Source: Macrostomum hystrix
Taxonomy: Eukaryota; Animalia; Platyhelminthes
Direction: 5' to 3'
Length of the DNA stretch: 64,000 nt
NCBI GenBank assembly: GCA_950097015.1
Contig: CATNEN010000001.1
Coordinates: 3,596,001 to 3,660,000 of the forward strand
The notes under the pieces were generated by a model. The model was not told the DNA's origin. It worked only from the letters and a program-made list of their open reading frames with translations, and searched no databases. A program made the position numbers and the translations under genes. Positions 3,260 to 46,020 of this stretch are shown piece after piece; the stretch's first letter is position 1, and every line of letters starts with the position of its first letter.

Positions 3260-3530
3260 GATGTGGGATAACTGCTGATGTGGGATAACTGCTGAAGTGG
3301 GATAACTGCTGAAGTGGGATAACTGCTGCACTGGGAAAACTGCAGAAGTTGAATTACTGATGAAGTTAGATAACTGCTGACATTGGATAACTGCTGAAGT
3401 AAGATAACAGGTTATGTGGGATTACTCCTGAAGTGATGAAATGGGATTTCTGCCGACATGGGATAACTGTAGATGGGGGATAACTGGTGAAAGGGGATAG
3501 CTGCTTAAAGGGATATCTGACGAAGTGACG
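3260..3530. repeat. degenerate 17-bp minisatellite (tgggataactgctgaag)
   Basis: Direct reading of tandem gggataactgctga units. A related short run lies at 4070-4145. Confidence 0.75.
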
Positions 3531-3759
3531 AATTTAGTTAGTGACGAATTTTTGAATAACTGAATAACTCGGGGCGGCTTAATTGCTAGTCACATTTTAA
3601 AATTTAAATTTGGACTGGAAGCGGAGCTCATTTCTTCCTTTTTTTCTAAGACTTGTGGCCAATGAAATTGCGCGATTTACACAGGGGCAGGGCAGATAGA
3701 CAGGATCAGGCACATATAGACAGAAAATAGCGTATTTATTTGTTGGCAGAAGCCAGAAC

Positions 3760-5015: not shown

Positions 5016-6173
5016 GAAAGAGTTTTTCTTTTCTAAGAAAATACCAAAACTTTGCCACTTAATAGCTTTATTGTTTAAGATAATCATACTTGATTTTCTT
5101 CATCAAATTCTTAAATATTTACTAGTAAGTTTAAATTTTACTCTAAAAGTTGGGTAAAGTCTATCACTTTAATATACCAATGATCTAATATCATGCATAG
5201 AAGGACAATTAATTTGGTTTCTGCATTAAAAAATTCGCAATAAAGTTCGAATTTTTATATTAAAAATTAGATAGAAAGTCAGATACAACAAACAGTAGTA
5301 ATGTAGGATCACATATATATATATATCATTTGTGTGAATTATCTGTGAGTTTCTTGTAAACATTTGCTATAGCATAGCTATAGCTATGCCCTATGTGAAT
5401 CTTTAAAAAATTTAAGTCTCTTTTGAAGAGGACAGAACAGAAGTAGCTATTCCTATATGAAGAAACAAATTTCTTAGCTTAAATTTAGCTAATATATGAT
5501 TTTTTGGAATAAATGTTACAATTACAACCCTATTTGGCTAGAGGAATTCTTTCAGTTTAAGGATGGAATAAATATATATATTTAGACATAACTAGCTATA
5601 ATCAGTGCTGCTGTTGTTGTCATAGACCACATTGAACACATATGAAAATATTTTTTTGTAATGGAGTGTGTGCTTTTGATTTACATGTAAAATATAATAG
5701 ATATTGTTAATTTTTTAACTGGAATTGGCTCTCTATTGTAAACATTTTATAATGCTAAAACACAAGGATCTCACCTTGTATAGTAGCAAAATAGCTGTAT
5801 ACAAAAGATTATCAGGCACACCAGATGGCAAATATGGATCTCAGATTTAAATAGTGAGTTGACAGCTGACCCTACCTATATTTTTATCCATTTTTGCCAA
5901 GCGAGAAGGTTTCCAGAAGTGCCCATAGATTTTGAGTGCAAGGTATTCAGAGCTTTGGTCAATTTTTAAGACTTTAGCTTCACAGCACTATGTTAAATGC
6001 AAGTGGTTAAAATGAATACAGCACATAATAGCTATATCAATCTACATTAAAAAGCTTTCTACTGAGGCTTACAGCACTTCTAGAGTGCAATGTACATTAT
6101 CCTCATTGATTTTAATAGCACATCTATAAAGTGCAATATACTAACTGTTTTATATAACAATTTGCAGTCTAGT

Positions 6174-7739
6174 CTATCTAGGAAAAAGATGGACTGTCCT
6201 ACTGTTTGGCTGTTGTGAGATAACATGTTCTTCAGCAGCACTTTGCTGTGTCATATGTGACAGGCTTGGTAATGAAAATTGTAAAGGTACCTGAGGAGGT
6301 ACTTGAGACTCAGATATCTGTATTTCATGTGGCAATAACATACCTGGGTAATAATTCTGCGAAAACTGAGCAAGACGTAGGTGACTATGTATTACTTGGT
6401 TTTGAGAACTTTTAAGTTGCTGCAAATGAATGTCTTCTAAATAAGCGTCTGGATTTTGGAATAAAGTATCAATACTATTGATATTTGAAGTAACATTGTT
6501 GAGACTGGTAATATCATTGACATTACTTTGTGATGCTTCTGCACTTTGACTACATTCTTCATTGAGGCTTATCTCAGCCTCAGCAGCATAGTCATTTTGT
6601 TGTGTAGCCACTAGTGCAGAATCATTACCATTTGCACTAGTACCTTGCATGCCAACAAGCAATGCTTGATTATGGTTTGCCAGAGTACCTTCTGTGCTAA
6701 TTGTAGGTGCTACATTTCTCTCATTCCATTCTGAATGAGACCAAAATTTCACTTCACCATGATCAGAAATTGCCTGAAATTGTGCAACACATTGCTGTTG
6801 GTTAAGATTATGGGGTGAAGAGAAGTTAGGAATAAAACGTCCTGGCCCTTTCTTCTGACCTGTAGCTAAATCAGAAGCTATAAGTGCCCATTGAATTGCA
6901 CCAGAGTTGCCTGCCCTTTCATAAGCGTCCTTAGCTATTTTACTAAGCTCTTTGCGCATGTAGACAACACCCTTTTTAATAATTTCTTCAAACTTTCCTT
7001 CTGTTTGAGGAAGCTGCTGCAAATTTTGAAGCCTGTGTTGCGCTTGCTTATCTGCTCTTATAAAATCAACAATAGAACTACATGCTTCTTGGACCTGTCC
7101 ACTCAAAGTGCCAGTGACATCTTTAGAACAGTGATAACTGGCTCTGTCATGTTCAGTAATTCTAATAACAATGTAAGTTTCTTTATGTTTGTCCAAGTCC
7201 TGAATGATTCTTTTAATTGGGCGAGGTCGATTTTTAGCAGCTTTTCCTAGTCGTTATTTTTTTGCTATACTTAGACCCTTATATTTCTCTAGCAATGCTA
7301 GAGTCCAAGCTGAAATGAAGAGGTATATGATATTAGAAATATTTAAACGAGACTTTCACTACTAGGCTTTTGTCCAGAACTGCAAGAATTAAAAGTGAGG
7401 CCATGCTTAAGTTAATCTCTCCTTGACCTTGGGGGGAGAGAACAACCGCATTACTGAATTAACTGTTTAAATAAAAAATGAAAAAGTAATACCCAAACCA
7501 GCATTATCCATGATAAGCATATTTACTAAGTTTTCAAGGCAGTCACCCAGTTTTTTTAGAAAACTAAGAAAGCTGCCCTTTTATTTTTTTCCAGTCAGCT
7601 GTACAATTCTGAACAAAAACCAAGTTAGTGGGTGCAGAAATGTTAGAAATGCCCAATTCCTTTAAATCTTACTGTATATAAAACACTTACTAGCACAGCC
7701 CTTCTTTCGAAGAAATTCATTGCCGCTAGTAGGTCCCAT
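6174..7739 (-). pseudogene. orphan spliced gene with a premature stop: exons 7739-7691 and 7309-6174 (includes the 340-aa ORF)
   Basis: ttttag|ATG GGA CCT...GCT A|gtaagt joins in phase to tttcag|CT TGG. This reads MGPTSGNEFLRKKGCATWTLALLEKYKGLSIAKK*RLGKAAKNRPRPIKRIIQDLDKHKETY..., with an in-frame TAA at 7256-7254. No domain recognised. Confidence 0.5.
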
Positions 7740-10700
7740 CTAAAATTAAGTTTTTTAGAAATATGTAAATCACATGTCTGTCACATGAACTATTTACCTA
7801 CTCTTCATTGGCAAAGTATATATTTTTGGAGAGTCTATAGGCATGTCAAGTAATACCATATTATAGGGCCACAAAATGGTCAAGTTAGAAAATCCAAAAC
7901 TGTAACATGTCACCATTGCTATTAATAGGAAAAAGCATAAAAAATTCATGAAATACAATTTTGAATTCTTAACTTGAAAATTAGTTCTACTTTGAAACTT
8001 ATTCTTTAGGAATTATTTAGCATGGTCATGGTGAATTTTTCAGTCTTGGAACAGCTATTTAAGTATTCTATAGCTACCAGTGGGACTGATATATTCGTTT
8101 CCTTGAAGGTGCTCTTAACAGGCCCTAGTCAAAACACATGCTGCACACATTTCACAAGCTTTGAGTTTTTTTTACTTTTAAAGAGGTAATCACAGTTTGA
8201 TCATGGTTTTCAGTTTTTGCACTAAATATTGATATTAATACATTTTCCTCAAACATTTCCAGCCTGCCTTGCTTGCTGCCTGACTGTTCGCTTGTCAACA
8301 TTATGGACTCTAATGGACGACTAGGTCTATGCTGTCAAACTGCCATTGTCTGGTTCTAGGCAAGCCTCAAGTTACTGCAATACTTTTGCTCTCAGAGCTA
8401 GCTACTATCAGCCTGCAGCTCGACTCTTTGGACGAGCGTGTGAGTTAATATGTATAAAAATATTGATTGCTTTTGTGAAAGTTACAGTTCAATGTGAATT
8501 CAAATGCAATGGCCCTCATTTTTTATAAACATGTGTTTTGGTCCTATATGGTCCTATTCTATTAATGCTACATGCTAATACCAATAATTAAACGAGGACT
8601 CGATTCCATATGATTCTCTTCTCAGATTCTCCTCTCTGCATCAGCCATGATGAGACATGCCCGCTATGGTCAGGCATTTTCCTTATATTTAACACACTGA
8701 CTTTGACAAATAGAGGCTGTTCCTGTTTCTAACTTTCAATTACATTCAAATTCTGCCGCTTTCCACAGTGCTTTTTTTCATCTGCTCTCTCTCCCGATCT
8801 CTTCGTCATTCCCCTTTTCTCCTGCGCCAGATGCAGAGTAAGAACGACTGACAGTTGATACTACTCCTCATCTAGTAGTCTGTGTCGCAACTTTTCTGTA
8901 TTGGTTTGACTGAAATATTCACTTCCTAGAAGGCACTCTTAACAGGTCATTGTCACAGGCCACAGGGCATGTTACATATTTCTCCGGGCTGCAGGTGTGG
9001 GTGCACTGATTAAGAGTTGGACTATCTAAGATTTGACACCTTGATATGTTGGGTTATCGGTAACATACTGGTAACATTACTGGTAACATATGGGTTACCA
9101 GAAATCTGCCTAACACAGGGGAAATAGGAGAGCGTGCATTTGAATGGGAGAGGGTGGCCTATCCTCTGCATATAGGATAGGTGACGCTGTGACGATCTAT
9201 GTGGCTGAGGGGTTGGAGCCCCATTACAATTAATCATCAGAATTCTGAGCACCAAAAATTAGTGAAAATTATCAGCATGAGCTTGCCGTGACACCCGAGA
9301 CAGTAATGACCCCTGGAATGGATTTCTAGGCTATGTATGCCACTGTTTAGATCTGCATGAAAAGCTTGTTAAGCAGGCAGCATTAATGAGCTATTACTAC
9401 TATTAATATTGATAGTAATAATTTATAATACCAGCAATTTCCAACTAGTAGATTATTATACAGCAGTAACAAATATGGATTGATTTTGACATGCCACAAA
9501 CTCTTACAATACATTATTACAAATAAAAAAATATTAAACCGACACCTAAACTTGACTTACCTGTCAGTTCTTATTTGAGCTAATAAAAAAGGGTTTCTAT
9601 TTAACAATTCTAGCTAGTATAGGTTATAGGATATATAATTAGATTTGAAGTTTTGACTCGACGAGCTCTTTACTATTCGAGTTTTGGTGGGAAGAGGAAA
9701 AACAGTTCGTTCCCCTTTGTCCCCCGCTCAAATAGGGATGTATGGCACCATCGTCTAGTTCGTTCCCAAGTTCGCGTAAACAACCCCTCCCAGCCAACCA
9801 CGCTTCATCATGGGGTTCCCACGCTTCACGTTCCCACAGGGAGCTCATGAGCTGCACTCGTCTAGCCGGACTCATGGCACGGTGAGGTGACCTGGGCTAG
9901 CCGTCTAATTTTTACCATGAGCTGGGGCCGGCTAGTCCACGGCCGTTAGGTGGGGGTACGGGGGGTTTTGGCGAAGAGTTTTTCTCTCCCAGGGTGAACT
10001 GCCCTGCGCACATTGGGCCAGCCAGTCAGTCCTCTGCAGTAATAAGCCCTCTCCTCTCTTCTCTCCCCCAAGCTATCGATTTTCCTCGGGTGGGGGCAGG
10101 CAGGCAAGTCCATATTAGTCCCTCTAATATGGCCAGCCCTCCAGCCCCGGCATCTGCTTGCCTCTGTTGCAGTTGCAGTTAGTGCGCTCTTCATTGCCAG
10201 GTAAAGAATTTTCTGATTCTTGCTACGTTGCTAGTGTTTTTAACCGTGCATTCTACTCAACTATCAAGCTGAGAATGCTTGCTCATTTCTAAGCCACTTT
10301 GTCTTCGAGCAGAGTGGGCTAAATTTGTGCGAAGTGAGTTCTGAGCAGAATTACTTGACATCAGTTTTAGCTATTCGATGCTATGATAAAGGCAGTTTTG
10401 AATCGGCTGTTGATATCTTGCTAAACATTTGCTAAGGACTATTAGAAACTAGCAGTTAAGTACAAATATATTTTGTAGGCCGCCAATATAAGCTGCACTG
10501 TTTTACATCCAGTGTCAGTCTATGGCCGCGGGCTAGCCGGCCTCAGCTCATGCGTTTATCGTGCGCCTAGCCAGGGTGCCCTCATGGAGTCATGGTGAGG
10601 TGAGCTGGGCTAGCCGATCGCAGCTCATGGGCCCAGCCAGGGTGCGCTCCTGGTGAGGTGAGCCAGCAGACAACGAATGCAGATCTATCGACGCAATCAG

Positions 10701-30577: not shown

Positions 30578-33500
30578 TTGTATTAAACTTAACTTGATAT
30601 TATATATCAGACTGATCGACTATTACGTCAGTCTTCTAGTAAGTCTTAACACCACATAACCGCCAGTCATTTCATATAATTTAAATGATAAAATAACCCA
30701 AGATAAGAAGTTGTGTATTGTGAAAACTATAAAAACTAATATTGAACAATCTTTTTTATTTCTTTTTTATATTTTTATATTGTTTTTAAATATATTCAGA
30801 AACGCCTGAATTTAACGCCTATTCATCGGACCCGCGCTGGTTAACTAAAAAACTAAAAAGTACAAAGCAGCAATTTTAAATATTTTTACCGAAATGTAAA
30901 ATTGATGCTCATTAGCAAAATAATCGGTCATTTTCCTTTCATATGGCTTGTTGGCCATGTTTAGAGAAGAAGCTGAGAGGCCCCCCGTATAACATTTAGA
31001 CGTTACCCCAAGGTCCCAAATACGTCCCCAAATGTATTGTTGTACCTGTGGTAGCGTGGCACACACAATTGGTAAAATGACCAAGACAGGAACTAGATTC
31101 TGAGAGGATCTTTACCGGCCTCAACGCTGGTGCTTTCTAGCAGAGGAACAATCCGGTAGTCAGGCTCAGAATGTCAAGTTCTCTAGTGCTTTCCTCTAAT
31201 TGGACTACGTCCTAACTGTTCTCGCGGATCTTATGCTTGATCGGGAGGCACACCAAGCTTCAAAATGCAGTATGCGGCCTAGATCAACAATAGTTTTATA
31301 AGATCTTAGAGGCAAGGTAATTCAATGCAAACACAAACGGTGAGCACAAACGCATGAAGAAATTTCATTGTTGTTGTTATCAAGTTTGGGGTAAAACACA
31401 GGGTTTTTACATCCTGCTCCCCGCGCATCAGCCGAAGCTCTTACGCTACATAAAAGAATGATATATTTGGTAATTATTGTTTAAAACATATTACTTGTTT
31501 GTAAATTATTTAAAAGTAGCGAGTTTAGATTTTAGAGATTGGAAAGTAATTGGTTATTTTGGTCATTCACGTGAGCAAAGTAGGTACATGCATGATGAGC
31601 AAATTAAAACAAAGGTGCATCTCTATAGTAAAACAAATAGGCCATGTGCAGTGTGCGAGGGAGAAAAAGGTGAGGGAAAACACCCCAGTGCGCGGGTTAT
31701 CACAAAGTTAACCTTTAATTTGATTGGTAACTTTTTATAGATTTGATGATAGTTGATATTTTAATTTGATAGTTTGATTTTTTGGATAGTACGAAGGTCT
31801 GGGGTGTGAAAAACCCACACCAAAAACCCCCGCCTGCACAGGACCTTTAAAATTATTTAATGTTAGTTATTTATTTATTGTCATCTTGTGTTATACTACT
31901 GTGAGTAGACTCCACTAAAAGTAGGTTTCCCCCATTTGATGGTGAGTTTTTTGTGAGTATAAATACCAAGGTGTTTTAGTACAAGGTGTTTTAGTACTAG
32001 CATAACTAATTGGCATCTATGACCAATGAGACGAAGTTAAGCCGATATACATTAATTTGTATTCACTGGCCCAGTGTTTGTGGTTCACTGGTAACCTGTG
32101 GTAGATTATTCTAACTGCAGGGAACGTCCCACGTCTCGGTTTGATGATGACAGTCAAGATTACCATGACATACTTGTGTGGTAGATTTGTCTAGAACTGG
32201 GACACAGCTTTTTGTTCTATTACTTTTGGTTTCATTGTCAACCCCGTCAATATTAATTACTAGTTGCATGTGATTAGTTAGGCAAAGTGAGCAAAGTAAG
32301 CAAAGTAAGCAAAGTAAGTGAAGTACGTAATGCATTTTACATTAGTTCATTACATTGGACTTTAGTTAATTTTTCGCGAACCATCTGGGCTTTTAAGAGT
32401 TTCCTCTCTGTTTTTCTAGTTCACCACTGATTAACTTTAGTTGTTGGAACAGAGGTACTCTGGTCCTTTTTGCTAGGTAGATGTCTGGTACGCTATCAAG
32501 TCCATGAATTTTGTTAGCGCTAGCTCGCAGGAACCACCTACTGGCTAGGTCATTAATTCTGGTCCTAATTGGTTCAACTTTAGAGAGCTTTCTTAGTAGA
32601 GCATTTTTGCAATATTTGGGTGCATCGTGGCAGAGACGCAGTGCGCGATTCTGGATGATTTGCAGTCTACCCACGTAGTGCTTGCTAAGCAGGGTGAGGA
32701 TGGGTGAGGCATAGGTGATGATGCTTTCGATGTAGGCTCTGTAGATGGCGATGAGAGAGCTGGTGGTGGCCTTGGTGAGCTGAGCCGTTGAAGGTGATGG
32801 GAGGGGGCTGACCGAAGTTTTTGGTTTTGTGGATGAAAGCGATGGCCTTACTTTTGCTTGGGTTGACCTTGATACCATATTTGCTCAGCCATTTTTGGTA
32901 GTCTTCTATAAAGTCCTGAATGAGTTTGCCAGCTACACTGGCTTTTAGTGATTGGCACCAAATCGAGGTGTCATCTGCAAATTGGCTGGCTCTGACCCTG
33001 ATGTCTTTGGGTTTGGGCATTGTGGCAACCACAATGAGGAAGAGGATTGGGCTGAGCACTCCCCCCTGGGGAACACCAGCCTCAGGTGTGAAGTAGTCAC
33101 TGAGTTGACCGTTTACTCTAACAGCAATCTCACGGTCTGACATGTAGTTTGAAAAGATCCTGGTTAATCTGATGGGCAGTTTGATTTTGTGGAGCCTATA
33201 TTGCAGTGCGTCATGCCAGATTTTGTCGAAGGCCCCTTCCACGTCAAAGAACACTCCGATGGTTGATCTTTTCTTGGTTTTTCCCTCCATTATGTCATGT
33301 ACTAGTCTGGCTAAGTTGTCATACGAGCAGTGCTTCTCTCTTTATGCACATTGGTTATGACCAAGTGTGTTATTTTCCTCTATGAATTTGTACAGTCTCT
33401 TTTTTAGTATTTTCTCAAACACTTTTCCTATACAGGAGGTGAGGCTGATGGGTCTGTAGCTGAGCGGGTCTTTTCTAGGTTTATCTGGTTTGTGGAGCAT

Positions 33501-35172
33501 TGTGGTATGGGCTTTTTTCCAGGCTTTTGGGAAATAGCCTAGTTTGAGACAGTTGTCCATAATTTTGGTGAGTACTATGATTGATGACGGACTAAGGCCC
33601 TTTTTGAGGATGATGTTGGGGATGTCATCAGGGCCTGGGGCTCCTCCCGACCTAAGGTGGGCAAGTTCCCAGGTGACGTCTGCTATTCGAATTGGTTCAG
33701 TGAGGTAGGTGTTGGTTTCCTCTGATTGGAGTTGGTTTGGGTCTGGGTTCTCTAGTGGTTGGAAGATGGTGCTATTGCTGGTGATGGAGGCCACTTTGTT
33801 GGTGAATCTTCTAGAGGTACTTATTTCTGGCCTCATTTTGTCACTAAGTGACTAATGACTAGTGACTAAGTGGCTAATAGGTTAGCTCTATCATAATCCG
33901 TGATGGCAGTAGTGTTATTATAAACTAGATTTGGAAATTTAGTTGGTTGCCTATTGGTGCCCATTATAATTCGGATGTCCCTCCAAAATTTATTGTTGTT
34001 GAATTTGAGACTGGATTGTGTAATTTTGGTGCAGAGGCTGTTGAATTTTTTGACTCTGAAGTGTTGAATTTCCTTCCTTATCTGAGATGCGAGCTCGTTG
34101 GCTGAGACTCGGAATTCGTCTATCCTCGTTTGGTGATATATTTTCCTTAGTCTTCGTTTATTCCTAATGAGTTGAAGGATGTTCTGTGGTAGTTCTTCCC
34201 TGGTGTTGTAGTTAGGCACTACCTTGTCGATGGTGAGTTTGAGGACGTCTGTGAAGGTGTCGATGGCATCGTCGATCTCGCTTGTAGTTCTCGCGTTGAA
34301 GTCGTTGTTCCACAATGTTGTGATGTTGTCTTCTAGTTCTATGTGAAAATTTTCCCAGTCTGTTTTATTGTAGCATTTAGGTGTACCTAGTGGTTTTTTG
34401 TCCTTTGGTTTGATTGCTATTTTGACGAGTTGAGGGAGGTGGTCACTGTTGAGGTCGTCTATTACTTCAAAGTGACTGATGTATGGTGCGAGGTCTGTTG
34501 TGCAGATACCTAGGTCGAGCACATTACCCAGATGTTTTTCAGCTCTTTTAGCGTAACGTGTGTATTGTCCTGGTTCATTGAGAAGAACGGGAGGTGAATC
34601 AGAGTCAATGAGCCACTGATAAAGTTGCTTTCCGGGATAGTTTTTTTGGGCTATCGCCCTGGAGTGCAGCCATTCTACAGTTGTAGTCACCGAGTATCAA
34701 GCTGTGGGTTGATGAGAGGAGTGAATCAAGAATGCTGGTGTTGAGAGTATCCGGAAGTGGTGCCCTATAGAAGAGTGAGATGGTGAGATGTTGCAGTCCG
34801 TTGCCGTTGCCCTTGGTGTCGATGGTGATAGAGATGTATTCATGGTTGGTGCCGTCATAGTGTGCACTGGCAGTGCAGATTTTGATGAATTCGCGGTGAG
34901 CAATGAGTAGACCACGTCTACAGTGAGGAGTGTCGAGTCTGATGGTTGAGTAGCCGGGAAAATTGACGTTGTCAGGTTCCTTGAGAGTTGTCTCAGATAG
35001 TAGTGCTATATCAATGTTATGATTTCTCATGTAGTCTCTAAGTTCCCAGATTTTATTCCAGATGCTATTGCAGTTTAAATGTAAGATGGTTAGTTCTTCA
35101 TTATTAAATTTAGTGCTACTGCCTTTCACGGTTAGTTTTTGCTTTTTGAGAAACACTGCTCGTGTCAGTATT

Positions 35173-38100
35173 TGTTGTATCGTGACTTGACTTGAAGTGC
35201 GCAGTGTGGGGCTGCACCCCAATTGTTATTGGCGCTGAGTTTAGGACTGCTTGCTCTCTCCCCGCCTGCTCTGTCTGTCAATGTACGCTTATGCCTAACC
35301 GTCTAATCTATTAGCTGATGCTTTACTCGTATCTGCATGTACATCTATGTGCAGTGCCAAATATAATAAATAACAACCTCTCGCCCATTTGCGGCTCAAG
35401 TTTGGCTAGCCAGCCACGACACGACAATGGCATCGCAAGCAGCCAGTGAATTACCTCTCAATGACCCAGCCATGGCTGAGGCCTGGCTGCAAAGTTTTGA
35501 AGCACTGTGCAGGCACAAAAAACTGCAAGATACAAACGAAGAGAAGCAGGTGACAGACCTCTTCCTTGCTCGAGCAGGAATCAATGCAGTCCGATCCGTC
35601 TCTATCATGGCAAAGCCGAAAAACATTGAGGATATGACCTTCAAGGACATCAAGAAAATGATCATCGGGCGACTCCAGCCCAAAAAGAAACTGGTGATTG
35701 CAGAGCGCACAAGGTTCATGTCCCAGCGGCAGCTGTCAACAGAGTCGGCCCAGCAGTTCGCGGAGCGCTTGAGAGACGCGGCAAAGCACTGTGAGTTTGA
35801 CAAGCTCAACGAACAAGGCTGCAAACAGTCAGCTGAGGATGACTTGATCCAAACATGCTGATCAGCGGCTTATGCGACCGCAGCCAGCGGACCAAAACAC
35901 TTGAGCACATTCAGAGCTCTGAGAATCCAGTGACTCTGGACACGTGTCTGCAGTACATCCAGCAGTTAGAGCTCATCCAGAGCTACAGCTCAAGCGACCG
36001 ATCTGCTGAAGCCCGAGAGCCTAGCAGAAGCTCCGAGACGGCTGAGAGTTCGACACCAGTTGCCAGCATCGACAGGAACCGCAATAGCGGTGCTCAGTGC
36101 AGGTCGTGTGGTCTGCAGCACCAGCCAGGCAAATGCCCTGCATTCGGGAAGACTTGTAACAAATGCCACCGCAGGAACCACTTTGCTGCAGTCTGCAGGA
36201 GCAGCGCCAAGTCCAAGTCGGTTGCACATGCCCATGAAATCGACACGAGCGAGTGTGAGCAGGCAGGCATCTACACCATTGTCGGCAACGAGAGCGGCAG
36301 CGGCAGCATAAAAACTGTGCTCATTGAAGGCAAGCCGTTCAAAATGCAGCTCGACTCTGGATCCGGTGCGAGCATCATTCCGATAAACTTCTGGAGGAGC
36401 CTCGGTGAGCCCAAGCTACGAAAGTCCAAGTTGAGACTGCGACAATTTGACGGAACAGTCATCAGAACTAGAGGATGCTTCACGGCGCTCATCGAAGTCG
36501 GGAGACAAATCGCCTGTGCGGACGTGACGGTCACTGAATGCACAAAGGAGCACGGCCTCATCGGAACAGACGTGCTGGACTTCAAGCTGGACACAGCGAC
36601 TGTCAATCAAGTGGAGCGCAGCAGCGAACCGCTAGGCAAGCTCAAAGGTTTCCGTGCTCGGGTCCTGCTCAGGGAGAACGCTCAGCCCAGCTTCTTCGAT
36701 GCCCGGCCGCTCCCGATTCATCTCAAGCCGCTGGTGGTGGCTAAGCTGCGGACGATGATCGACGCCGGGATCCTCGAGCCTGTGCCACCAGGCGGCAGCA
36801 GTTGGGCATCGCCCATTGTGGTGGTGCGCAAGGCCGACGGAGACCTGAGAATCTGCTCCGACTACAAGGTCGGGGTGAACCCGAAGATCTGCTCTGACGC
36901 CTACCCACTGCCCAACATCGAGCAAGCCTTCAGTGCCCTGGCAGGTATGAAGCACTTCGCAATTGTAGACTTAACAAATGCCTACAACCAGATTGAGCTA
37001 GACGAGGCCTCCAGAGAAATACTCACCATCAACACGCCCCTAGGCCTGCTCAGATGGACGCGCATGCCATTCGGGGTGAAGACGGCCAGTGCGCAGTTCC
37101 AGGCTGCCATGGAGGCAACGGTCGGCGGTGCGGTCAGCAACCTGGTGATCTACCAAGACGACATGTGCGTTGGCGCCACCACAGCGGACGAATTGGACAG
37201 CAAAGTCCGGGACCTGCTGAGAGCGCTTTCTGATGCCGGCATGTCGATCAACGAAAAAAATGCGTTTTCCGCAGCACGGAAATCAGTTTCCTTGGCTACC
37301 GCATCGCGGCTGACGGCGTGCGCCCTGATCGGAAGCTGGTGGAGAAAATCCTCGGCGTGAGCACCCCGGCGAGCAAAAAGGAACTCGAATCGTTTCTAGG
37401 AATTACGGTGTACTACTCACGCTACATCAAGTCCAACTCGGAGAAGACCGAGCCGCTGACCGAGCTGCGGAGCAAGAAAGTCGCGTTCCATTGGGGACCT
37501 CGGCAGCAGAAAGCGTTTGACGAGCTCAAGCAGGCGCTTGCAGCTTCCCCAGTGGTCCGAATCTTCGATGCAAGAAAGCGCACAACTCTGACTACTGACG
37601 CCAGCGAGAAGGCCATAGCAGCAATACTCTCTCAGGACGAGCACCCAGTGATGTACCTGTCAAGACGGCTGACACCGGCTGAGAGAAATTACTCGAATAT
37701 CGAGCGAGAGGCCCTGGCTGTGGTGTGGGCCACTCAGAGAGCCAGACACTTTCTTCTCGGCAGCAAGTTTGTGCTCCAGTGCGATCATCAACCATTGGAG
37801 TTCATTTTTAGTTCGTCTCGGGAGCTTCCAAAGGTCACATCGGCAAGGATCATGCGCTGGGCGTTGCAGCTGTGGGCCTTCGACTACGAAATCTCGTACA
37901 TCAAGGGCAGCTGCATCCCGCATGTCGACGCGCTGTCTCGAATTGAATTCAAGGAGGAAGGCGATGGAGACGACTGCCAGGAAAGCTTCGTTCACTGGGC
38001 AGAGACGGAGGTGCTCAAGCTGGAGCAGATCAGAGACGCCACTGACAATGACCCGGTGCTCGCCAGCGTCAAGCGCAGGATCCGCAGCAATGCGTGGAAC

Positions 38101-39531
38101 AACTGCTCGGCAGCGGAGCGACCGTATAAAGCCGTCCGCCAGCAGCTCTCAGTGGAGAGTGGCGTCGTCTGCCTGAGAGACCTGGTGGTCCCGCCTAGCC
38201 GGCTGCGGCAAGACGTGCTGCGAGCGGCTCACGGCGACTCGCACTGCGGTGCCCTAGCGACAAGAAATCGACTCAAGCTGGAAGCCTGGTGGCCGGGTCA
38301 CTGCGTGGACGTCGAAAACTTCGTCAAGCAATGCCAGCGATGCGCGGAGATCCGTCCAATGCCTGCCAGAACGTGCCACACCTGGCCGGCGGAAAATGGT
38401 CCCTGGAGACGCGTGCACATGGACCATGCTCACGTTCCCGGCTTCGGCCTGCTGCTCATTGTGGTGGACGCCTTCTCCGGCTGGCCGGAAGCGGTGCCTG
38501 TTGCCGACAAGAGCGCGATGACGGTCATCAAGGTGCTCCGCTTGATTTTTTCCCGCCTGGGTGTGCCGCATACCTTGGTGGCGGACAATGCTCCGGAGTT
38601 CCGTGACCAGCAGCTGCACGAGTGGCTCAAGAAGATCGGCTGCTCGCCGATGCACTCGCCGCCGTATCATCCGCAGTCAAACGGGTGCGCCGAGCGCATG
38701 GTCCAGACCGTCAAGAAGGGGCTGCGGGCCTTCGCCGTGCACCAGGGCAGGTTCGACGCGTACCTCGCCAAGCTGCTGCTTGGCGGGCCACTCCGCGGGG
38801 CGACGGGCGTGGCAGTCCGTCTGCACTTATGGGGCGACAGCTGCGAAGTCCGCTGACCCTCCAATTCGACACCGATGCGCCGCTCGTCTACCAGTCGCGA
38901 CCGGGGGTGCCGGCTGAGACCGTCCGCTTTGTGGTACAGGCCGGCCACAACACGGCCGTGGTCACCCGGGACAAGGACGACAGGCCTGTGCTGGCACACC
39001 GGGATCAGCTGCGTTTGTGTCCGAGTCCAAGTCGGGCGGAAGTTACGGACAACACTGACGACGGCGGCCGGGATCCTGACGATGCCGGTCGGAGCCCTGA
39101 CGACGGCGGCCGGAACCCTGACGAAGGCGGCCGGAACCCGGAACCTATTAGCCAGCGGCCAGACGCAGCGGCACCACCGCAGCAGACCGCTGAAGCTACA
39201 CCGGAGCCCCGACGAAGCTGCAGGTCGACCAAGGGAGTCGCCCCAGACCGACTGTCTCCTCGTTGGTGATGAGGGAATGTTGTATCGTGACTTGACTTGA
39301 AGTGCGCAGTGTGGGGCTGCACCCCAATTGTTATTGGCGCTGAGTTTAGGACTGCTTGCTCTCTCCCCGCCTGCTCTGTCTGTCAATGTACGCTTATGCC
39401 TAACCGTCTAATCTATTAGCTGATGCTTTACTCGTATCTGCATGTACATCTATGTGCAGTGTCAAATATAATAAATAACAACCTCTCGCCCATTTGCGGC
39501 TCAAGTTTGGCTAGCCAGCCACGACACGACA
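35173..39531 (+). mobile_element. second Ty3/gypsy LTR retrotransposon nested in LINE ORF2
   Basis: 254-bp LTRs at 35173-35426 and 39278-39531 (one mismatch seen). 5-bp TSD gtatt. PBS TGGCATCGCAAGCAG directly after the LTR. PPT gatgagggaa. Confidence 0.95.
35427..39269 (+). pseudogene. Gag-Pol with three frameshifts (~35857, ~37260, ~38780)
   Basis: Consecutive ORFs give gag, CCHC (CNKCHRRNHFAAVC), protease LDSGS, RT YQDD, RNase H TDAS, and integrase HGDSH...CQRC with DDE. Confidence 0.92.
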
Positions 39532-39633
39532 GTATTTTTGGAATTGGTTGGCTCTCTAGTATCATTATCCAGTTCTATCTTAGTTTTCAGTTCTAGCCCA
39601 GATGGTTCGGTTGCAAACATATAATCAATGAAT

Positions 39634-39885
39634 TTAAACAGCTGAATCTAGAGACGATTGTAGTTTACTTAAATTATCGCATAGTTGAGCCGTCCAAACG
39701 GTCGGAGGCCGCCACCCTGTTGCTAATTGGACCAGCTGGATGGACGCCTCTACGAGTCCAGCCACTGTCTTATTCTCAGGCTTGGCGAATGCTGCGTGGA
39801 CTAGTGCGAAGGCGACTGCTTGCAGTAGTTCCAGGGCGTGGACCTTCGGGCCAATCGGCGCCTGCCTGTAGCCCGGGGTTGCTGG

Positions 39886-39916
<31 letters not shown>

Positions 39917-42521
39917 GGGGCAAGAGGCGCCGAGTGAGCTACCAGCTCCGTCTCGCCAGCGCCACCGACCTAGCGGGGTCGGACGTCAGCACATTAAGAT
40001 TGAGGTCATCACTGTCGAAAGTAGCCAGTCTCTCCCTGCGGAGGGCCGGGCATTGAAGCCAGTGTTCCACGTCTTCCGGGGCCATACCGCAACGGAGGCA
40101 GGTGGGGTCGGCGTGCGGGTTGATAACGCTGCTATAGGCCCGCAGAAGGCTACAGTGGCCCGAACGCAGCCTGGCCAGGAGCACCGCGTTGCTGGTGTTG
40201 GCGGAACCTGGGTCGTCACTGGTTCCGGACGCCTAGATCTTGGCGGCGTTGGTAGCAGGGCGTTCCTTGACGGCTCGTAGTTGTTGTTCTCGACCGGCGC
40301 TGCTGCGGCGGCGGCGAGTGCCTCGTTTTGGAGAAGGCAAGAGACCTGGTTTACCAAAGGTTGCCTTGGTACCAAAGAGTTTGGAAGAGAAGGGAAGTCC
40401 TCGCTGGAGTCGTTGTTCGGCAGTGTTGGAATTTGCATGAGAGGAGGAATGGCTTGGCGTTGCTGGCGTTGTTGTGGAGGAGCTAGAGCTGCGGCGTAAC
40501 TCCTCGGAGGAGGAGGACGTTGGACTTGAGGAGGAAGATTTTTAGATGCCCATGCCTGGACTCGGTTGTTGGCTGCCTGCCTTGCCGGACATGCCTTGTC
40601 GGTGGACTGGTGTGGACCTTTGCAGTTGGCGCACCGGATGTAGAAATCTGGGATGCCTACGCTGTCACACTCGGACGTTAGGTGATCGGACCCACAGACC
40701 CTGCACCTTGGTCGACGATCACATTGTTTGGAATGGTGGCCGAATGCCTGACAGTGACCACACTGAGTTGCCATTAGTGGAGGAGGTGACCTGCTGGCTT
40801 CGCATCGGAAGTGGAAGAACCCGATGTGGATGCCTTTGGAAATGCATCGGGCTTGCGTACCTAAGTCTGTTGTGAAGGCTCGGACAAATTGAGTTGGCTC
40901 GTTGGAAGAAGAAGAGATAATCCGGACAATGCCTGAGATGTTGGGCTCGACCGACTGGATTCTCAAGAGAAGGTCCTTAAGATCCGTTGCAAGAGATACC
41001 TGACGGATGATGAAAGACAAGGCTTTTGGAGTCGTGATGTTGGCTGGAAGACGTCTGGAATTAACCTGGGCGTCCTCACGTCGGATGGGAAGGCGGCGTT
41101 CTACCTCGATGCCGTCGATGGTTGGATGCTTAAGTTCGTCAGAAGTAAGATGCTGGTAACCTTGGAAGTCAAGAGCAAAGACCTTGAAGCCAGAAGAGTA
41201 GAAGCAGCGTTGGACGGACTTGATGCGAACTGTCGGGAAGTTGTCCTTAAGGAACCTCTCGAACCTAAGCTCGTCAAGAGTCGATTTTGGAAGGAGGAAG
41301 AGCACTGGTGCGACCTTGGAGTTTCCTTTTGGCTGAGAAGAAGAAGGAGGCTGATCCGGAAATTGGCTGTCATGGACAGAAGAATTGCCTTGTCGTTGCG
41401 AAGTAGAAGGAGAAGAATCTTCCTCGATGATGGTCTTGTCGCTAACCTCGACGATTTCGTAGACGGAAGTGTCAAGAGGATTGGACGGCTTGGATGGAGC
41501 TTGTTGGAAGTCATTGATGTCCTGGATGGCTGGAGAAGTAACTCGGAAGGTAAGATTTACACGCATGCCTTTGACGCGGGCGTCCTGGATGATGGAGTGC
41601 TGGCAAAGTGACTGAGTTTCTCCTCGCATGACGATGAGACTACCGTGATAAAGAGGTTCGGAATGAAGAGTTGCTCAAGAGTTGCCAAGAGAAAGAGATG
41701 CGATGACTGGATTGCGCCCAAGTTCGGGCTCGTTGTCGGAGTGGAATCCTACGAAGTCGTTGCCGGTTCGGTAGACGTTGACAAGACAAGAGTTGAAGGC
41801 CGGTAAGTCAAGTTGAGACGACAGGAGTTGAGCAAGATTGCGGATGATTGGATGCCAGTTGTTGTTAGCCTGGATGGTTTCTCCGGAATAAGAATAAGAG
41901 GGTCCGTACCAGACAATTTGTCTCGGTTCCGGACGACCTTGAGAGCGGTGCGTTGTGGCAAGAGGAAGAATCTCGTCCTGGATGGTCTTGAGGAGGTCAT
42001 CGGCAAGATTGGTGAAGGCGTTCGGATAGAAGTCGACTGGACAGGTGTCAAGAATAAGAAATTTGGTGTAGCACCCAAGACTATTGATGGCAAGCAAGTC
42101 AAGGCTTTTGGACGATGTGGAAGTGCAAGTAGAAGAGGTCGAACCTGTGGAGTTGCGCGCACTCGCCGCCGTCGATACAGAATTGGTGTCGCTCGGACTG
42201 GGCTTGGGCTTGGACTTGGGCTGGGACTTGGTCTTGGGCTTGGACTTGGGCTGGGACTTGGGCTTGGACTTGGACTTGGACGATGGTGTTGTTGGGAGAG
42301 GATGTACTGGATGCGGGAGGAGAAAGCATCTCAGTGTCCTCGGTGATGTTGCTGCTGGCTGGCGTTGGGGCTGCGGACTGACGTCGCTGCTTCTTGTCCG
42401 TGGCTGCGGCTTGGGCGACTGCGTCGGTTGATTGGCGGAGATTGCGCTTGGTTTGTACTGGTGGCGGCTGCGGCGGCTTGATTGGCTTGGGGTCCTTTAG
42501 ATTCTTTGGCTTTGTCGACAT
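39634..42521 (-). pseudogene. LINE ORF1: basic/low-complexity N-terminus, AlkB (2OG-Fe(II) dioxygenase) domain, three CCHC knuckles
   Basis: AlkB motifs PRQIVWYG..YSYSG, FNSCLVNVYRTGNDFVGFHSDNEPELGRNPVIASLSLG, HGSLIVMRGETQSLCQHSI and RVNLTFR. The same frame continues to CGHCQAFGHHSKQC, CRVCGSDHLTSEC and CANCKGPHQSTDKAC. Lesions: frameshift ~42290, in-frame TGA 41677-41675, insertion 39891-40187. Confidence 0.9.
39891..40187 (-). mobile_element. 5'-truncated LINE 3' fragment (Ingi/Nimb/I-like) inserted in ORF1
   Basis: 13-bp TSD gttgctggtgttg (39878-39890, 40188-40200) and (CAA)n tail. Encodes LARLRSGH...CLRCGMAPEDVEHWLQCP. Removing it restores the ORF1 frame to TAA at 39634. Confidence 0.88.
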
Positions 42522-43503
42522 TTTCTAATTACTAATTTAATAAACAGCTAAGCTAAGTGGAGTGTGGTGCCGGATCCAAGGGATAGATGAGTGAGAAGAG
42601 TGAGTAATAAAGTAAGTAAATTATAGTAAAATTGTAAAGCAATTAAATGTAAGTAGTATAAATTCAATTAAAGTAAAACCTGTAAAGTAATTAAGCAATT
42701 AAATGTAAAAGTAGTATAAATTCAATTAAAAGTAGTATAAATTAAAGTAAAACCTGTAAACCTGTAAACAATTAAATGAATTAAATGAATTAAATGAATT
42801 AAATTCAATTAAAAGTGCAATTTAAATTCAATAAAGTGATATAATGCAATTACGATAATAGTAGTATAAAGCAATTAAGTAAAAGTAGTAAATATGCAAA
42901 TACGATGATAAAAGTAGTATAACGCTGTTAAATTCAATAAGGAGAGCAATTAAATTAAATTATAAAACTGTAAATAAAGTAAAACAGTATAAATAAAGTA
43001 AAACTATAGTAAAACAGTAATTAAAACTATAAAACTAAAAGTAAAACTAAAAGTAATAAAGCAAAAATAAAAGAAGCACGAGAGAAGCAAAAAAGGACGG
43101 GAACAGGGACGGGAGCAGGGGCTAACCTCTAAAGAGGGTAGCAGGGAGCAGAGGACAGGGGCAGAGGAAAGGGGCAGGGGCTAGCCTCTAAGAGAGGGTA
43201 GCAGGGAGAGGAGGAGGAAGGGGAGAGGAGGAGGAGCAGGAAGGGGAGAAGGGAGAAGGCCCTCCTCTTAGAGAGGAGGCAGGGGAGAAGGAAAAAAGGG
43301 GCTTCCTCTTAGAGAGGAGGCAAGGAGAAGGAGAACTAACCTAACCTAGTCGACTATGAGGGTTTACCCCTTAGAGAGGTAAAAAGCTAGCTGAGCGGCT
43401 CCTAAAACCACACCAGTAATTTGACACACTGGCTTGGATGCGGTTCTGTCTGGATATTTCCGCTCTTCTTGACCGTTAGGTCTCTAATTCGGAAGGATCC
43501 GGC

Positions 43504-46020
43504 ACGCATGAAGAAATTTCAGTCCACACAGTGCCATCAATATAAAGAAATAGTGCTACCATGATACCAACACCATCTCAAGGATTCGTCGGACTGTGCT
43601 CTACTTATAGTAGGAGCATTTGAGCGTTGTTTTGCCAGTCTTCTTCCGAACTTAAGTGATTGCACCATGGTGTGCAATGTGAATCAGTGCGCAGACAGAG
43701 CTGGAACGAGAGAGAGAAAGCGGAGGGGGTGGCGAGCGGAGGTGACAGTGCACGGGAAACACTAACTACCTACACCCCAGCCCTCCCACAGACCTAGAAC
43801 AGCCTGACTCACGGATTGCCTGGAGGCTGCTCAGCAGTCTACAGCACATCACTCTCCTCCAGCTAAAGGATGACGGTCAACACCGGCTGGCCGTCAGCCG
43901 CACTTAAACAAAACACGTGAGTACCTTTATTTATTCAGCTTGCATGGCGCATACCAACATAAACATAGTGATTTGCATGGCGCATACGAGAATTGACATG
44001 ATAATTTGCATGGCGCATACAAAAAAAACTAAACATGCATCGCCAATTGAAACACCAAGGCGTAGAACACTAAAAAACATGCAACTAAATGGCGCACAGG
44101 CTACAAAGAACTGGATAAAAGGCAGACATATCATGGGAGCATAGGCATAAGCACCAAAGACAAGCATATTATGATCCGCGCTTTTACCAGCGGCATGCGT
44201 AATGTCCTGAATATATGAGGCACACACCACTCATTTACCTACTCACCTTGGCCCTCAGAACTGGGCCATACGTACGAGTGCCTCCGGATACCAAGAGCAC
44301 TCGACTAATTCGGTCACCGCCTGCCCGTATCGGGCCATGAGGTGGTGCGGTGTGCGGGCCGGTCCTCCCAGCATTCTTTCGGCTCGAGCAGCCGCCTCGT
44401 GGAGCATTTCCAGCCTCGTACCTCGCTGCTCTTCTGCGTAGGCTCTCTGAGCTGCAGCCGGCCACCCTTCGTCCATCTGCCCCCGGGCGGCCCGCACCAG
44501 AGATTCAGCCACAGACTGAGTTGCGGCCTCTCTATCGGTTGCCCGCATACTCCACAGGGCGCGTCTCTGGCGACGCCGCTGGGCACCTCCCCGACGCCGC
44601 CGTCTCTGCTGTCTAGGCTCCGCAGCGTCGTCGCTAGATGATGAAGAGGAGCTGTGCGGCAGCTGTCCCTGCAGCTGCGCTACTCGCGGAGGCGCTGCAG
44701 GGCCTTCTACCTCATCTCCTTCAGCTGGCTCTGGGTCTGAGTCTGGGTCAGACATCCCTTCGTCATCCGAGGGCATGCCCTCCTGTAACTCAGCCCATAG
44801 TCCTCGCCTGGGTCGAACTGGGCTTCTACCGAGCCACTGCTACTGCTACTGGACGCAGGTCTCCTAGCCTGCACTCCTGCCTCCGCGGTGTCAGGTGCTA
44901 CCTGCGTGGCTTTGCAGACCTTCTTTTCCAATGGCCCTGACGCTTTTGCAGCCGGACGCTTGTGCGCTTGCTGTAACCGGGGTAAGGAGGGCATGAAGTG
45001 ATGATGCCAATTCGGCGAGCGCTGACCCAAAGGGAAGGGCGCACTTTGGCCGAACTGGCTCCTAAGGATATCAATCCGCTTACTTACCCCTACGGGCTCA
45101 TTGACTTTGCGGACCACTCCCATTAGGCGAGGGCGCGTCGGTAATCTCTCTTCTGGCCCCCAGTTCTCCTTGTCCTCCATTGATATTCTTTTATTTGTTG
45201 CAATTTCTTCTTTTCTTTCAAAGCGTCTTGTCCGATTTGATTCGGAACGGGGTTCACTGGAACATTGTAGGTAGGCCATACATTGCTCTGATAAAGTAGG
45301 ACTTTCTGCTAGGATCGACCTGCAATCTCTCAGGCTCTCGCCTTTCTCTCTGCGGCCTTTGCCCCGGCTCTAGATCCCTAGCCTCACCTACTTGAGCAGC
45401 CTCACCTACTTCTTCGGCCCTAACACTATCTGCAACTTCCCGGTGCATAGAGGATGGGATAGGGGGCAGGGTTGGAGAGGGCAACGGACTGTCCGACGGC
45501 AGGACAACCACATCACCAGACGCCTCCCCCGCCTCTTCTCCGTTGCAGATCTCGCGGCCGACCGACTCGTGGAGACCCGACCTGGAGTGAAATCGTGGTC
45601 GCAAGTGCCACCTTCGAGCGCTCCACAGGCCGATCTCGTCATCGTCGCTGTTGTCGTAGCTGTCGTCTGGTTCGCCGGACGCGTCAGCTGTCGGAGGGCT
45701 ACCCTTGGGTGGCCTCCCAAGCTTTCGCCGTGCCGTGTTCACCTCCTCCGTCCTGTCGCACATCGAGGCTGGTACCGGGAGCAGGTTGCGCCGATGGACT
45801 ACCAGCACCTGCTTCCTAGCCTTCTTGGTGCTGCCGTGTCGCCGGATCTTGTACACTGTCTCGCCTTTACTCTCGAGCACTACGTAGACCGACTGTCTGG
45901 GCCGATGAAATTTGCTGATCTCGCCGGCCTCGATCACCGGGTTGTTGAGTAGGACCAGCTGGCCCGGGCGGAGTGGTCTCGCCTGCGGTCTCTCTTGGTA
46001 GTGCTCTTCTCGCAGCAGCA
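43504..46020 (-). mobile_element. 3' remnant of an older gypsy element: integrase C-terminus, extra ORF, PPT and 3' LTR (LTR probably continues at 31367-~31047)
   Basis: LRPGQLVLL...SKFHRP...YVVLE...VYKI...VVHRRNLLP resembles a gypsy integrase C-terminus. Purine tract gggagggctgggg is followed by TGTAGGTAG at 43774, and a matching CTACCACA end lies at ~31047 beyond the LINE. Confidence 0.6.
44255..45180 (-). pseudogene. additional ~310-codon ORF downstream of integrase, one frameshift at ~44830
   Basis: MEDKENWGPEER... (45180) and ...LWAELQEGMPSDDEG...VRMAQF* (44255) are overlapping GC-rich frames. No domain recognised. Confidence 0.45.

What the first reader, a model, noticed from the sequence alone, without database searches (positions are those of the whole stretch)
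39634..42521. AlkB (ALKBH2/3-type) dioxygenase built into ORF1 of a LINE retrotransposon
Seen: residues ~42040-41540 encode a recognisable AlkB fold with NxY, HxD (FHSD), the distal His (CQHSI) and RxxxxxR (RVNLTFR). They are in frame with the three CCHC knuckles, intronless, and inside an element bounded by an 18-bp TSD and a (CAA)n tail, so the domain moved with the LINE. Established: ALKBH2/3 and the AlkB domains of some plant RNA viruses oxidatively remove m1A/m3C, lesions that block reverse transcriptase. The usual ORF1 accessory domains are RRM, CCHC, PHD and esterase, and I am not aware of AlkB being a standard one. Inference: ORF1p coats the element RNA, so it could repair or demethylate its own template or cDNA, or counter host methylation-based silencing. 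This copy is damaged: a TGA at 41675 where the fold looks ~9 residues short, a frameshift at ~42290, and a nested insertion.
Basis: partly seen in the sequence, partly recalled or inferred. Interest (0 to 1): 0.92.

Follow-up and report, generated by a model that had tools for sequence, protein, structure and literature searches.

The report
LINE ORF1 carrying an AlkB demethylase
A broken copy of a flatworm jumping gene (a LINE) belongs to families whose RNA-coating ORF1 protein carries a conserved ALKBH3-like demethylase, an accessory enzyme I found no paper reporting for LINEs, which suggests methylated bases hinder their copying.

Summary
Window 41531-42067 (-) encodes an AlkB domain (Pfam PF13532, E 4.9e-14) in frame with three CCHC knuckles of a LINE ORF1.

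This copy is dead. It has a 62-bp frameshifting deletion, a 39-to-9-nt replacement that creates the TGA, two nested insertions and an ORF2 deletion.

The AlkB element really spans 32032-43851.

The same genome, a Macrostomum-like flatworm, holds at least 78 AlkB matches:
- One is an intact 97%-identical element with an 891-aa ORF1 (AlkB, two RRMs, three CCHC) and an APE+RT ORF2.
- At least eight further diverged ORF1 lineages carry AlkB, as does a second LINE type without CCHC.

The HxD...H and RxxxxxR residues are invariant. dN/dS on AlkB is 0.07-0.08, and AlkB is the best-conserved part of ORF1. Sequence and predicted fold are closest to ALKBH3.

The LINE domains form their own clade (100/99), apart from the intron-containing host ALKBH3 (49% identity).

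Function is inferred: removal of reverse-transcriptase-blocking m1A/m3C from the element's own RNA or cDNA.

I found no paper on AlkB in LINE ORF1. This scan noted the same families earlier on other DNA of this genome.

The parts
32032..43851 (-). Whole (dead) copy of the AlkB-carrying LINE, interrupted by two nested insertions
   Evidence: blastn against the intact same-family element L031 positions 927-8235, 93-98% identity in blocks
42522..43851 (-). 5' UTR of the LINE copy
   Evidence: Aligns to L031 927-2206, upstream of the ORF1 ATG
42099..42521 (-). ORF1 start (ATG at 42521) and low-complexity N-terminal part. A 62-bp deletion in the (CAAGYC)n repeat at about 42200 shifts the frame
41531..42067 (-). 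AlkB (ALKBH3-like Fe(II)/2OG dioxygenase) domain, broken by an in-frame TGA
   Evidence: Pfam PF13532 E 4.9e-14 on this copy and 9.2e-30 on the intact copy. Motif coordinates
41675..41684 (-). Lesion in the AlkB domain: 39 nt replaced by 9 nt (ATREFRFRATSNR becomes NS*), with TGA at 41675-41677
   Evidence: Pairwise alignment with L031. A contig of another run carries the undeleted version (loose end at 41676)
40787..41314 (-). Two tandem RRM-like domains of ORF1
   Evidence: AF2 model of the homologous intact segment, pLDDT 81, two beta-alpha-beta-beta-alpha-beta units. Foldseek hits tandem-RRM proteins (hnRNP A1 UP1 and others) at E about 2e-6
40589..40762 (-). Three CCHC zinc knuckles of ORF1
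   Evidence: Regular-expression scan of the translation. zf-CCHC Pfam hit in a sister family
39891..40187 (-). Nested 5'-truncated 3' end of a different LINE (ORF2 C-terminal Cys/His motif, (CAA)n tail), flanked by the 13-bp TSD CAACACCAGCAAC (40188-40200 and 39878-39890)
   Evidence: Gap in the alignment to L031 with a 13-nt overlap. Sequence read
39634..39890 (-). C-terminal part of ORF1 up to its stop codon (39634-39636)
   Evidence: Aligns to L031 4626-4882
39530..39565 (-). First codons of ORF2 (MILESQPIP...), cut off by the LTR element
35173..39531 (+). Nested LTR retrotransposon (gag-protease-RT-RNase H-integrase) with two 100%-identical 254-bp LTRs
   Evidence: ORFs. LTRs at 35173-35426 and 39278-39531
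32032..35177 (-). Rest of ORF2 (APE endonuclease + RT) and 3' UTR, with a 130-bp internal deletion
   Evidence: Aligns to L031 4976-7350 and 7480-8235. Domains of the intact ORF2

Best explanation
The window holds a dead copy of a roughly 7.3-kb LINE. In intact relatives its ORF1 protein reads: disordered N-terminus, ALKBH3-like AlkB dioxygenase, linker, two RRMs, three CCHC knuckles, helical C-terminus.

Shown:
- The AlkB domain is an integral, intronless and long-maintained part of ORF1 in a whole clade of LINEs of this flatworm genome and of Macrostomum lignano.
- All iron- and 2-oxoglutarate-binding residues are kept, and the domain is under strong purifying selection.

Inferred:
- ORF1p coats the element's own RNA, so the tethered enzyme would oxidatively remove N1-methyladenine/N3-methylcytosine-type methyl groups from that single-stranded RNA, and possibly from the first-strand cDNA.
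- These bases cannot pair and stop reverse transcriptases, so removing them would keep the template readable during target-primed reverse transcription.
- Whether the methyl groups come from chemical alkylation or from host enzymes is left open.
For: Domain identity:
- Pfam PF13532 at E 9.2e-30 in the intact ORF1, which lies directly upstream of an APE+RVT_1 ORF2.
- Best solved relatives are ALKBH3 (E 2.6e-30), then ALKBH2, then E. coli AlkB.
- The AF2 model (pLDDT 92.5) superposes on ALKBH3 bound to ssDNA with TM 0.87-0.90 and rmsd 1.5-2.7 A.

Family evidence:
- At least 78 genomic matches, many in open frames of 780-1120 aa.
- Nine lineages at 35-93% identity all keep HxD, the distal His and RxxxxxR.
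- dN/dS on AlkB is 0.078 (dS 0.41) and 0.070 (dS 0.18) in the two unsaturated pairs. AlkB is more conserved than the RRM-CCHC core between families (63 vs 57%, 56 vs 44%).
- The LINE AlkBs form one clade (100/99) that pairs own-genome families with M. lignano proteins.

Tethering to RNA:
- The rest of ORF1 is a tandem-RRM plus CCHC RNA binder.

Established knowledge:
- ALKBH3 prefers single-stranded DNA and RNA carrying m1A/m3C.
- AlkB treatment removes m1A/m3C reverse-transcription blocks (PMC5066629).
- AlkB domains of plant RNA viruses repair their RNA (PMC2553587).
Against: - No activity, substrate or expression was measured.
- RNA evidence is one 263-nt contig in a metatranscriptome, outside the AlkB segment, and it could be DNA carry-over.
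- The hairpin ahead of the WYG strand looks shorter than in ALKBH3 when I compare by eye with my memory of the human sequence. The residue after HxD is N in some families and D in others. Substrate choice therefore cannot be read from sequence.
- The LINE clade is not inside the animal ALKBH3 orthologue clade, so ALKBH3 biochemistry is transferred by similarity only.
Confidence: 0.6

Rival explanations
1. Counter-defence eraser. The domain removes regulatory methyl marks that the host writes on transposon RNA (m6A, or enzymatic m1A/m3C) to mark it for decay or silencing. It would not be repairing damage that blocks the polymerase.
For: An AlkB-type m6A demethylase encoded by orchid Ty3/Gypsy elements is active in vitro and was interpreted this way (PMC9289625). 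m6A affects L1 activity in mammals (PMC7873242, listed).
Against: The domain is ALKBH3-like, not like the ALKBH5/FTO/ALKBH9-10 m6A erasers: ALKBH5 ranks about 50th in the fold search, well behind ALKBH3 and ALKBH2. No host writer was examined.
Confidence: 0.2
2. DNA-directed role. The enzyme acts on single-stranded DNA at the integration site or on the new cDNA, or gives the host a general alkylation-repair benefit that favours retention of the elements.
For: ALKBH3 works on ssDNA, and the best structural matches are ALKBH3-ssDNA complexes. Target-primed reverse transcription exposes ssDNA.
Against: The domain is fused to an RNA-binding RRM-CCHC protein rather than to ORF2. The host keeps its own ALKBH3, so a host-level benefit is unnecessary.
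Confidence: 0.1
3. Non-catalytic module. The AlkB fold serves only as an extra nucleic-acid-binding or oligomerisation domain.
For: None directly. Some 2OG-oxygenase folds have lost catalysis in other families (my own knowledge).
Against: All metal- and cosubstrate-binding residues are invariant across lineages down to 35% identity. That is not expected for a purely structural role.
Confidence: 0.05
4. Accidental, functionless capture of the host ALKBH3 mRNA by one LINE, seen here as decaying cargo.
For: This particular copy is broken.
Against: - Intact copies exist in many diverged lineages with dN/dS about 0.07.
- Identity to the host ALKBH3 is only 49%.
- The LINE domains form a separate clade with a long stem.
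- The same families occur in M. lignano.
Confidence: 0.02

Closest known systems
Human ALKBH3 (PDB 2IUW, 8JNK, 8JNR), the ssDNA/RNA m1A/m3C demethylase
   Same: Same fold (TM 0.87-0.90), 36% identity in the structural alignment, the same HxD...H triad and RxxxxxR, and the best sequence match in the PDB.
   Different: The domain is part of a transposon ORF1, not a free-standing host enzyme. It lacks the ALKBH3 N-terminal extension, and the loop between the last strands is shorter than in the host enzyme. It lies outside the animal ALKBH3 orthologue clade, which does contain the host's own intron-bearing ALKBH3.
Type I LINE ORF1 proteins (RRM + CCHC) of the Jockey superfamily and related clades
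   Same: Position upstream of an APE+RT ORF2, RRM folds followed by three CCHC knuckles, many dispersed copies.
   Different: An enzymatic AlkB domain sits ahead of the RRMs. A survey of ORF1 domains in 448 Jockey-superfamily elements lists RRM, CCHC, PHD, esterase and coiled coil, and never mentions AlkB (PMC4120745). The RT clade of these flatworm LINEs was not determined here.
AlkB domains in replicases of plant RNA viruses (Flexiviridae and others)
   Same: A mobile RNA replicon carries its own AlkB. The viral domains repair m1A/m3C in RNA (PMC2553587, PMC544882). The fold is shared.
   Different: The viral domains sit in an RdRp polyprotein of plant viruses and match more weakly (TM 0.65-0.72, 19-26% identity). 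Here the carrier is an animal retrotransposon and the partner is an RNA-coating protein.
AlkB (m6A demethylase-like) ORF of orchid Ty3/Gypsy LTR retrotransposons
   Same: A retrotransposon lineage that fixed an AlkB-family demethylase, proposed to act on its own RNA (PMC9289625).
   Different: That case is an LTR element in plants, with a separate extra ORF, an m6A-eraser-type domain and a recent acquisition in one genus. Here it is a non-LTR element in animals, the domain is fused into ORF1, it is ALKBH3-type, and it is old enough to span lineages with saturated dS.

Membership tests
AlkB family of Fe(II)/2-oxoglutarate dioxygenases (Pfam PF13532) | Profile match above the curated threshold | tested here: met
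   53 bits (cut-off 31.2) on the window fragment. 104.7 bits, E 9.2e-30, on the intact same-family ORF1
AlkB family of Fe(II)/2-oxoglutarate dioxygenases (Pfam PF13532) | HxD...H iron triad and RxxxxxR 2OG-binding pair | tested here: met
   H109, H167, R179 and R185 are invariant in nine lineages. The HxD aspartate and the NxY motif are seen in all rows. In the window copy they lie at 41735-41746, 41588-41602 and 41543-41563
AlkB family of Fe(II)/2-oxoglutarate dioxygenases (Pfam PF13532) | Double-stranded beta-helix fold with the nucleotide-recognition lid | tested here: met
   AF2 model with pLDDT 92.5. Foldseek top 25 hits are all ALKBH3/ALKBH2, TM up to 0.90
AlkB family of Fe(II)/2-oxoglutarate dioxygenases (Pfam PF13532) | Oxidative demethylase activity | not testable with these tools
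   Needs a biochemical assay
ALKBH3 orthologue group | Groups with animal ALKBH3 in a tree, to the exclusion of other AlkB lineages | tested here: inconclusive
   It falls on the eukaryotic ALKBH3-like side of a 100/96 split from bacterial AlkB, but as its own 100/99 clade outside the 94/97 animal ALKBH3 clade. A sister position to the flatworm host ALKBH3 is not rejected (AU p 0.185)
LINE (non-LTR retrotransposon) with Type I ORF1 | ORF1 followed by an ORF2 with APE endonuclease and reverse transcriptase | tested here: met
   L031: ORF1 2207-4882, ORF2 4951-7872 with Exo_endo_phos, Exo_endo_phos_2 and RVT_1. The same holds in L033 and L034
LINE (non-LTR retrotransposon) with Type I ORF1 | RRM domain(s) plus CCHC knuckles in ORF1 | tested here: met
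   Tandem RRM folds. Three knuckles
LINE (non-LTR retrotransposon) with Type I ORF1 | Dispersed multicopy family with 5'-truncated and decayed copies | tested here: met
   At least 78 AlkB matches on many contigs, a mix of intact and broken frames
LINE (non-LTR retrotransposon) with Type I ORF1 | Target-site duplication and 3' tail at the ends of the copy | tested here: inconclusive
No TSD or tail at 43851/32032 or at the ends in L031.
LINE clade assignment (Jockey, CR1, L2, ...) | RT phylogeny with reference elements | not tested
   No reference RT set was at hand. The word-based search with the RRM-CCHC part found nothing

The most novel reading that the evidence does not exclude
LINEs of at least three architectures carry an ALKBH3-like demethylase:
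- the RRM-CCHC ORF1 type;
- a type with a knuckle-free ORF1;
- in another organism, a single-ORF element with a restriction-like endonuclease.

If the enzyme cleans the element's own template, then non-pairing methylated bases (m1A/m3C) are a real and so far unrecognised barrier, or a host restriction, to retrotransposition in animals. Transposons would then have evolved their own eraser against it.
Probability: 0.4. Interest if true: 0.8.

Novelty: new variant of a known kind. Interest (0 to 1): 0.68.

Why it matters
ORF1 proteins of LINEs are regarded as RNA binders and chaperones. The known add-ons are PHD fingers and an esterase. A conserved nucleic-acid demethylase in ORF1 would be a new enzymatic activity in the LINE ribonucleoprotein.

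It points to base methylation of the template (m1A/m3C) as a factor that limits reverse transcription in vivo. It parallels the AlkB domains of plant RNA viruses and of orchid Gypsy elements, so three unrelated kinds of RNA-based replicons would have converged on the same solution.

Macrostomum lignano is a laboratory model with RNAi and transgenesis, so the idea can be tested. In practice, these proteins sit in public databases as 'Fe2OG dioxygenase domain-containing' or hypothetical host proteins and should be annotated as transposon ORF1.

Tried and rejected
The TSD and (CAA)n tail flank a nested 297-bp fragment of another LINE.
- **Recent capture of the host gene rejected.** The host ALKBH3 (L036, two exons) is only 49% identical and sits in the animal ALKBH3 clade. 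Only its second exon was used.
- **Independent origin of the CCHC-less family G cannot be claimed.** It branches apart (85/89), but holding it with the main clade is not rejected (AU p 0.48).
- **Searches that gave little or nothing.**
  - Word-based protein search with the AlkB part of the full-length ORF1: 4 hits only.
  - Word-based protein search with the RRM-CCHC part: none.
  - ESM Atlas: nothing usable.
- **Tools unavailable.**
- **Expression not established.** Only contigs were available. There is one 263-nt RNA-library contig at 40832-41094 and nothing over AlkB.
- **Literature.** Searches found AlkB in orchid Gypsy elements and in plant viruses, but none in LINE ORF1. The library does not hold most subscription journals or Repbase Reports.
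- **dS saturation.** dS is saturated for most inter-family pairs, so only two pairs give usable dN/dS values.
Full report
**What is in the window**

On the minus strand, three open frames follow each other between 42521 and 39986.
- The middle frame (42097-41675) hits Pfam 2OG-FeII_Oxy_2 at E 4.9e-14. It contains NSCLVNVY and FHSD.
- After a TGA at 41675-41677 the same frame continues with QHSII and RVNLTFR. It then runs through three CCHC knuckles at 40589-40762.
- So the AlkB motifs and their in-frame link to the knuckles are real.

**True limits and damage of this copy**

A blastn of an intact relative (L031) against the window shows that the element runs from 43851 to 32032. Identity is 93% over the 5' UTR and start of ORF1, and 96-98% over the rest. 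The copy has five lesions:
- A 62-bp deletion in a hexanucleotide repeat near 42200 shifts the frame.
- A 39-to-9-nt replacement at 41676-41684 removes ten codons of the AlkB fold and creates the TGA.
- A 297-bp, 5'-truncated 3' end of another LINE sits at 39891-40187. It has a (CAA)n tail and a 13-bp TSD.
- A 4.36-kb LTR retrotransposon with identical 254-bp LTRs sits at about 35178-39529, just after the ORF2 start.
- ORF2 has a 130-bp deletion.

I found no TSD or tail for the AlkB LINE itself.

**The intact element**

L031 lies elsewhere on the same contig and carries both reading frames.
- ORF1 is 891 aa (PF13532, E 9.2e-30).
- Sixty-nine bases downstream lies a 973-aa ORF2 with APE endonuclease and RVT_1.
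- The ORF1 segment between AlkB and the knuckles is predicted to fold into two RRM-like domains (pLDDT 81). It matches tandem-RRM proteins in the PDB.
- The architecture is: disordered N-terminus, AlkB, linker, RRM, RRM, 3x CCHC, helical C-terminus. This is a Type I LINE ORF1 with an enzyme added in front.

**Spread within the genome**

- A six-frame search with the AlkB piece finds at least 78 matches, from 99% down to 35% identity. Many lie in open frames of 780-1120 aa.
- From the loci I could read, nine lineages (A, A2, B, D, E, F, H, I, G) carry the domain.
- Families D and F were seen whole, with ORF1 followed by APE+RT.
- Family G is a different LINE type. Its 840-aa ORF1 has AlkB at the N-terminus and no knuckles. 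Its 1144-aa ORF2 ends in a Cys/His motif.
- A search with the RRM-CCHC part shows that almost every hit of this ORF1 type has an AlkB hit just upstream. I found no relative clearly lacking the domain. At least two hits (C3:15319712, C1:17479386) have no AlkB hit nearby. I take them for 5'-truncated copies, but I did not inspect them.

**Selection**

- H109, H167, R179 and R185 (numbering of alignment A1) are invariant, as are the aspartate of HxD and the NxY motif.
- Nei-Gojobori dN/dS on the AlkB segment is 0.078 (A vs A2, dS 0.41) and 0.070 (F vs F2, dS 0.18).
- Between more distant families AlkB is the best-conserved part of ORF1.
- This rules out neutral cargo.

**What kind of AlkB**

- Against PDB sequences the order is ALKBH3 (108 bits), then ALKBH2 (66), then E. 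coli AlkB (30).
- An AF2 model (pLDDT 92.5) superposes on ALKBH3-ssDNA complexes with TM 0.87-0.90.
- Viral matches exist but are weaker for RNA-virus replicase domains.

**Beyond this genome**

A profile search of 1.84 billion representatives gives about a dozen proteins standing above the general AlkB plateau.
- Several are Macrostomum lignano entries named only 'Fe2OG dioxygenase domain-containing' or hypothetical.
- Others come from unnamed Logan assemblies and have the same AlkB-RRM-CCHC build (P0002, P0129, P0132, P0136).
- One (P0001/P0005) has AlkB with a different C-terminal part.
- One 1787-aa protein (P0187) joins AlkB, zinc fingers, RVT_1 and a C-terminal restriction-like endonuclease motif. 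It is absent from this genome.

**Host enzyme and organism**

- The host's own ALKBH3 (L036) has an intron and is 89% identical to an M. lignano protein.

**Phylogeny**

In a careful IQ-TREE analysis:
- Bacterial AlkBs split from the eukaryotic ALKBH3-like set at 100/96.
- All RRM-CCHC-type LINE AlkBs, plus P0001, form one clade at 100/99 with a long stem. Own-genome families pair with M. lignano sequences.
- The host ALKBH3 sits in the animal ALKBH3 clade at 94/97.
- LINE A is 49% identical to the host enzyme.
- AU tests do not reject adding family G to the LINE clade (p 0.48). They also do not reject placing the clade next to the flatworm ALKBH3 (p 0.185).
- The acquisition is therefore old. 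The donor was of eukaryotic ALKBH3 type. The number of gains is unresolved.

**Mechanism**

Shown: a catalytically complete, selected AlkB is fused to an RNA-binding ORF1.

Inferred from known ALKBH3 and AlkB chemistry:
- m1A and m3C stop reverse transcriptases, and AlkB removes these blocks (PMC5066629).
- Viral AlkB domains repair RNA (PMC2553587).
- From this I infer that the enzyme demethylates the element's own single-stranded template or cDNA.

Rivals are an eraser of host regulatory marks (compare the orchid Gypsy case, PMC9289625), a DNA-side role, and a non-catalytic role. No expression or activity data were obtainable. The only RNA-library contig lies outside AlkB.

**Novelty**

- A survey of 448 Jockey-superfamily ORF1s lists RRM, CCHC, PHD, esterase and coiled coil, and no AlkB (PMC4120745).
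- Full-text searches found no paper on AlkB in a LINE.
- This scan had already noted the same families on other pieces of this genome.

**Limits**

- The host ALKBH3 exons were not joined.

Noticed in passing
window 35173-39531 (+): A compact 4.36-kb LTR retrotransposon (gag with CCHC, protease, RT, RNase H, integrase) has two 100%-identical 254-bp LTRs. It is inserted just after the LINE's ORF2 start, so it is a very recent insertion.
   Followed up: partly
window 39891-40187 (-): A 5'-truncated 3' end of a different LINE family (ORF2 C-terminal CxxC...HxxxxC motif, (CAA)n tail, 13-bp TSD) is nested in the AlkB LINE's ORF1.
   Followed up: yes
L031 vs L032, L034 vs L024 (own genome): ORF1 looks mosaic between subfamilies. 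For A vs A2, dS is 0.41 in AlkB but 0.065 in the RRM-CCHC part. For F vs F2 the values are 0.18 and 0.04. This suggests recombination or module exchange between LINE lineages.
   Followed up: no
G000:C12:3678975-3692365 and G000:C29:3903259-3934739: Family F AlkB-LINEs stand in head-to-tail arrays with about 5.5-6.5-kb spacing: three copies on C12 and at least six on C29, most with open ORF1 frames of about 922 aa.
   Followed up: no
L035 (G000:C1:8051500-8061400); five identically scoring copies: A second LINE type has AlkB at the N-terminus of a knuckle-free 840-aa ORF1 and a 1144-aa APE+RT ORF2. Five copies give identical scores, which suggests very recent activity.
   Followed up: partly
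L037/L039 (G000:C10:303123-309068) and duplicates on C41: Tandem pairs of a 420-aa and a roughly 360-aa frame combine N-terminal C2H2-like zinc fingers with an AlkB domain, where HSE replaces HxD in the one I read. They group with P0186 (95/95) and are not LINE-like. They may be a host gene family.
   Followed up: no
P0187 (Logan protein, organism unknown): A 1787-aa single-ORF retroelement protein combines AlkB, zinc fingers, RVT_1 and a C-terminal restriction-like endonuclease motif. This is a third LINE architecture with AlkB, and it is not present in this genome.
   Followed up: partly
L036 (G000:C10:1693194-1694518, -): The host's own ALKBH3 gene has two exons and an intron of about 440 bp. 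It is 89% identical to an M. lignano protein in exon 2.
   Followed up: partly
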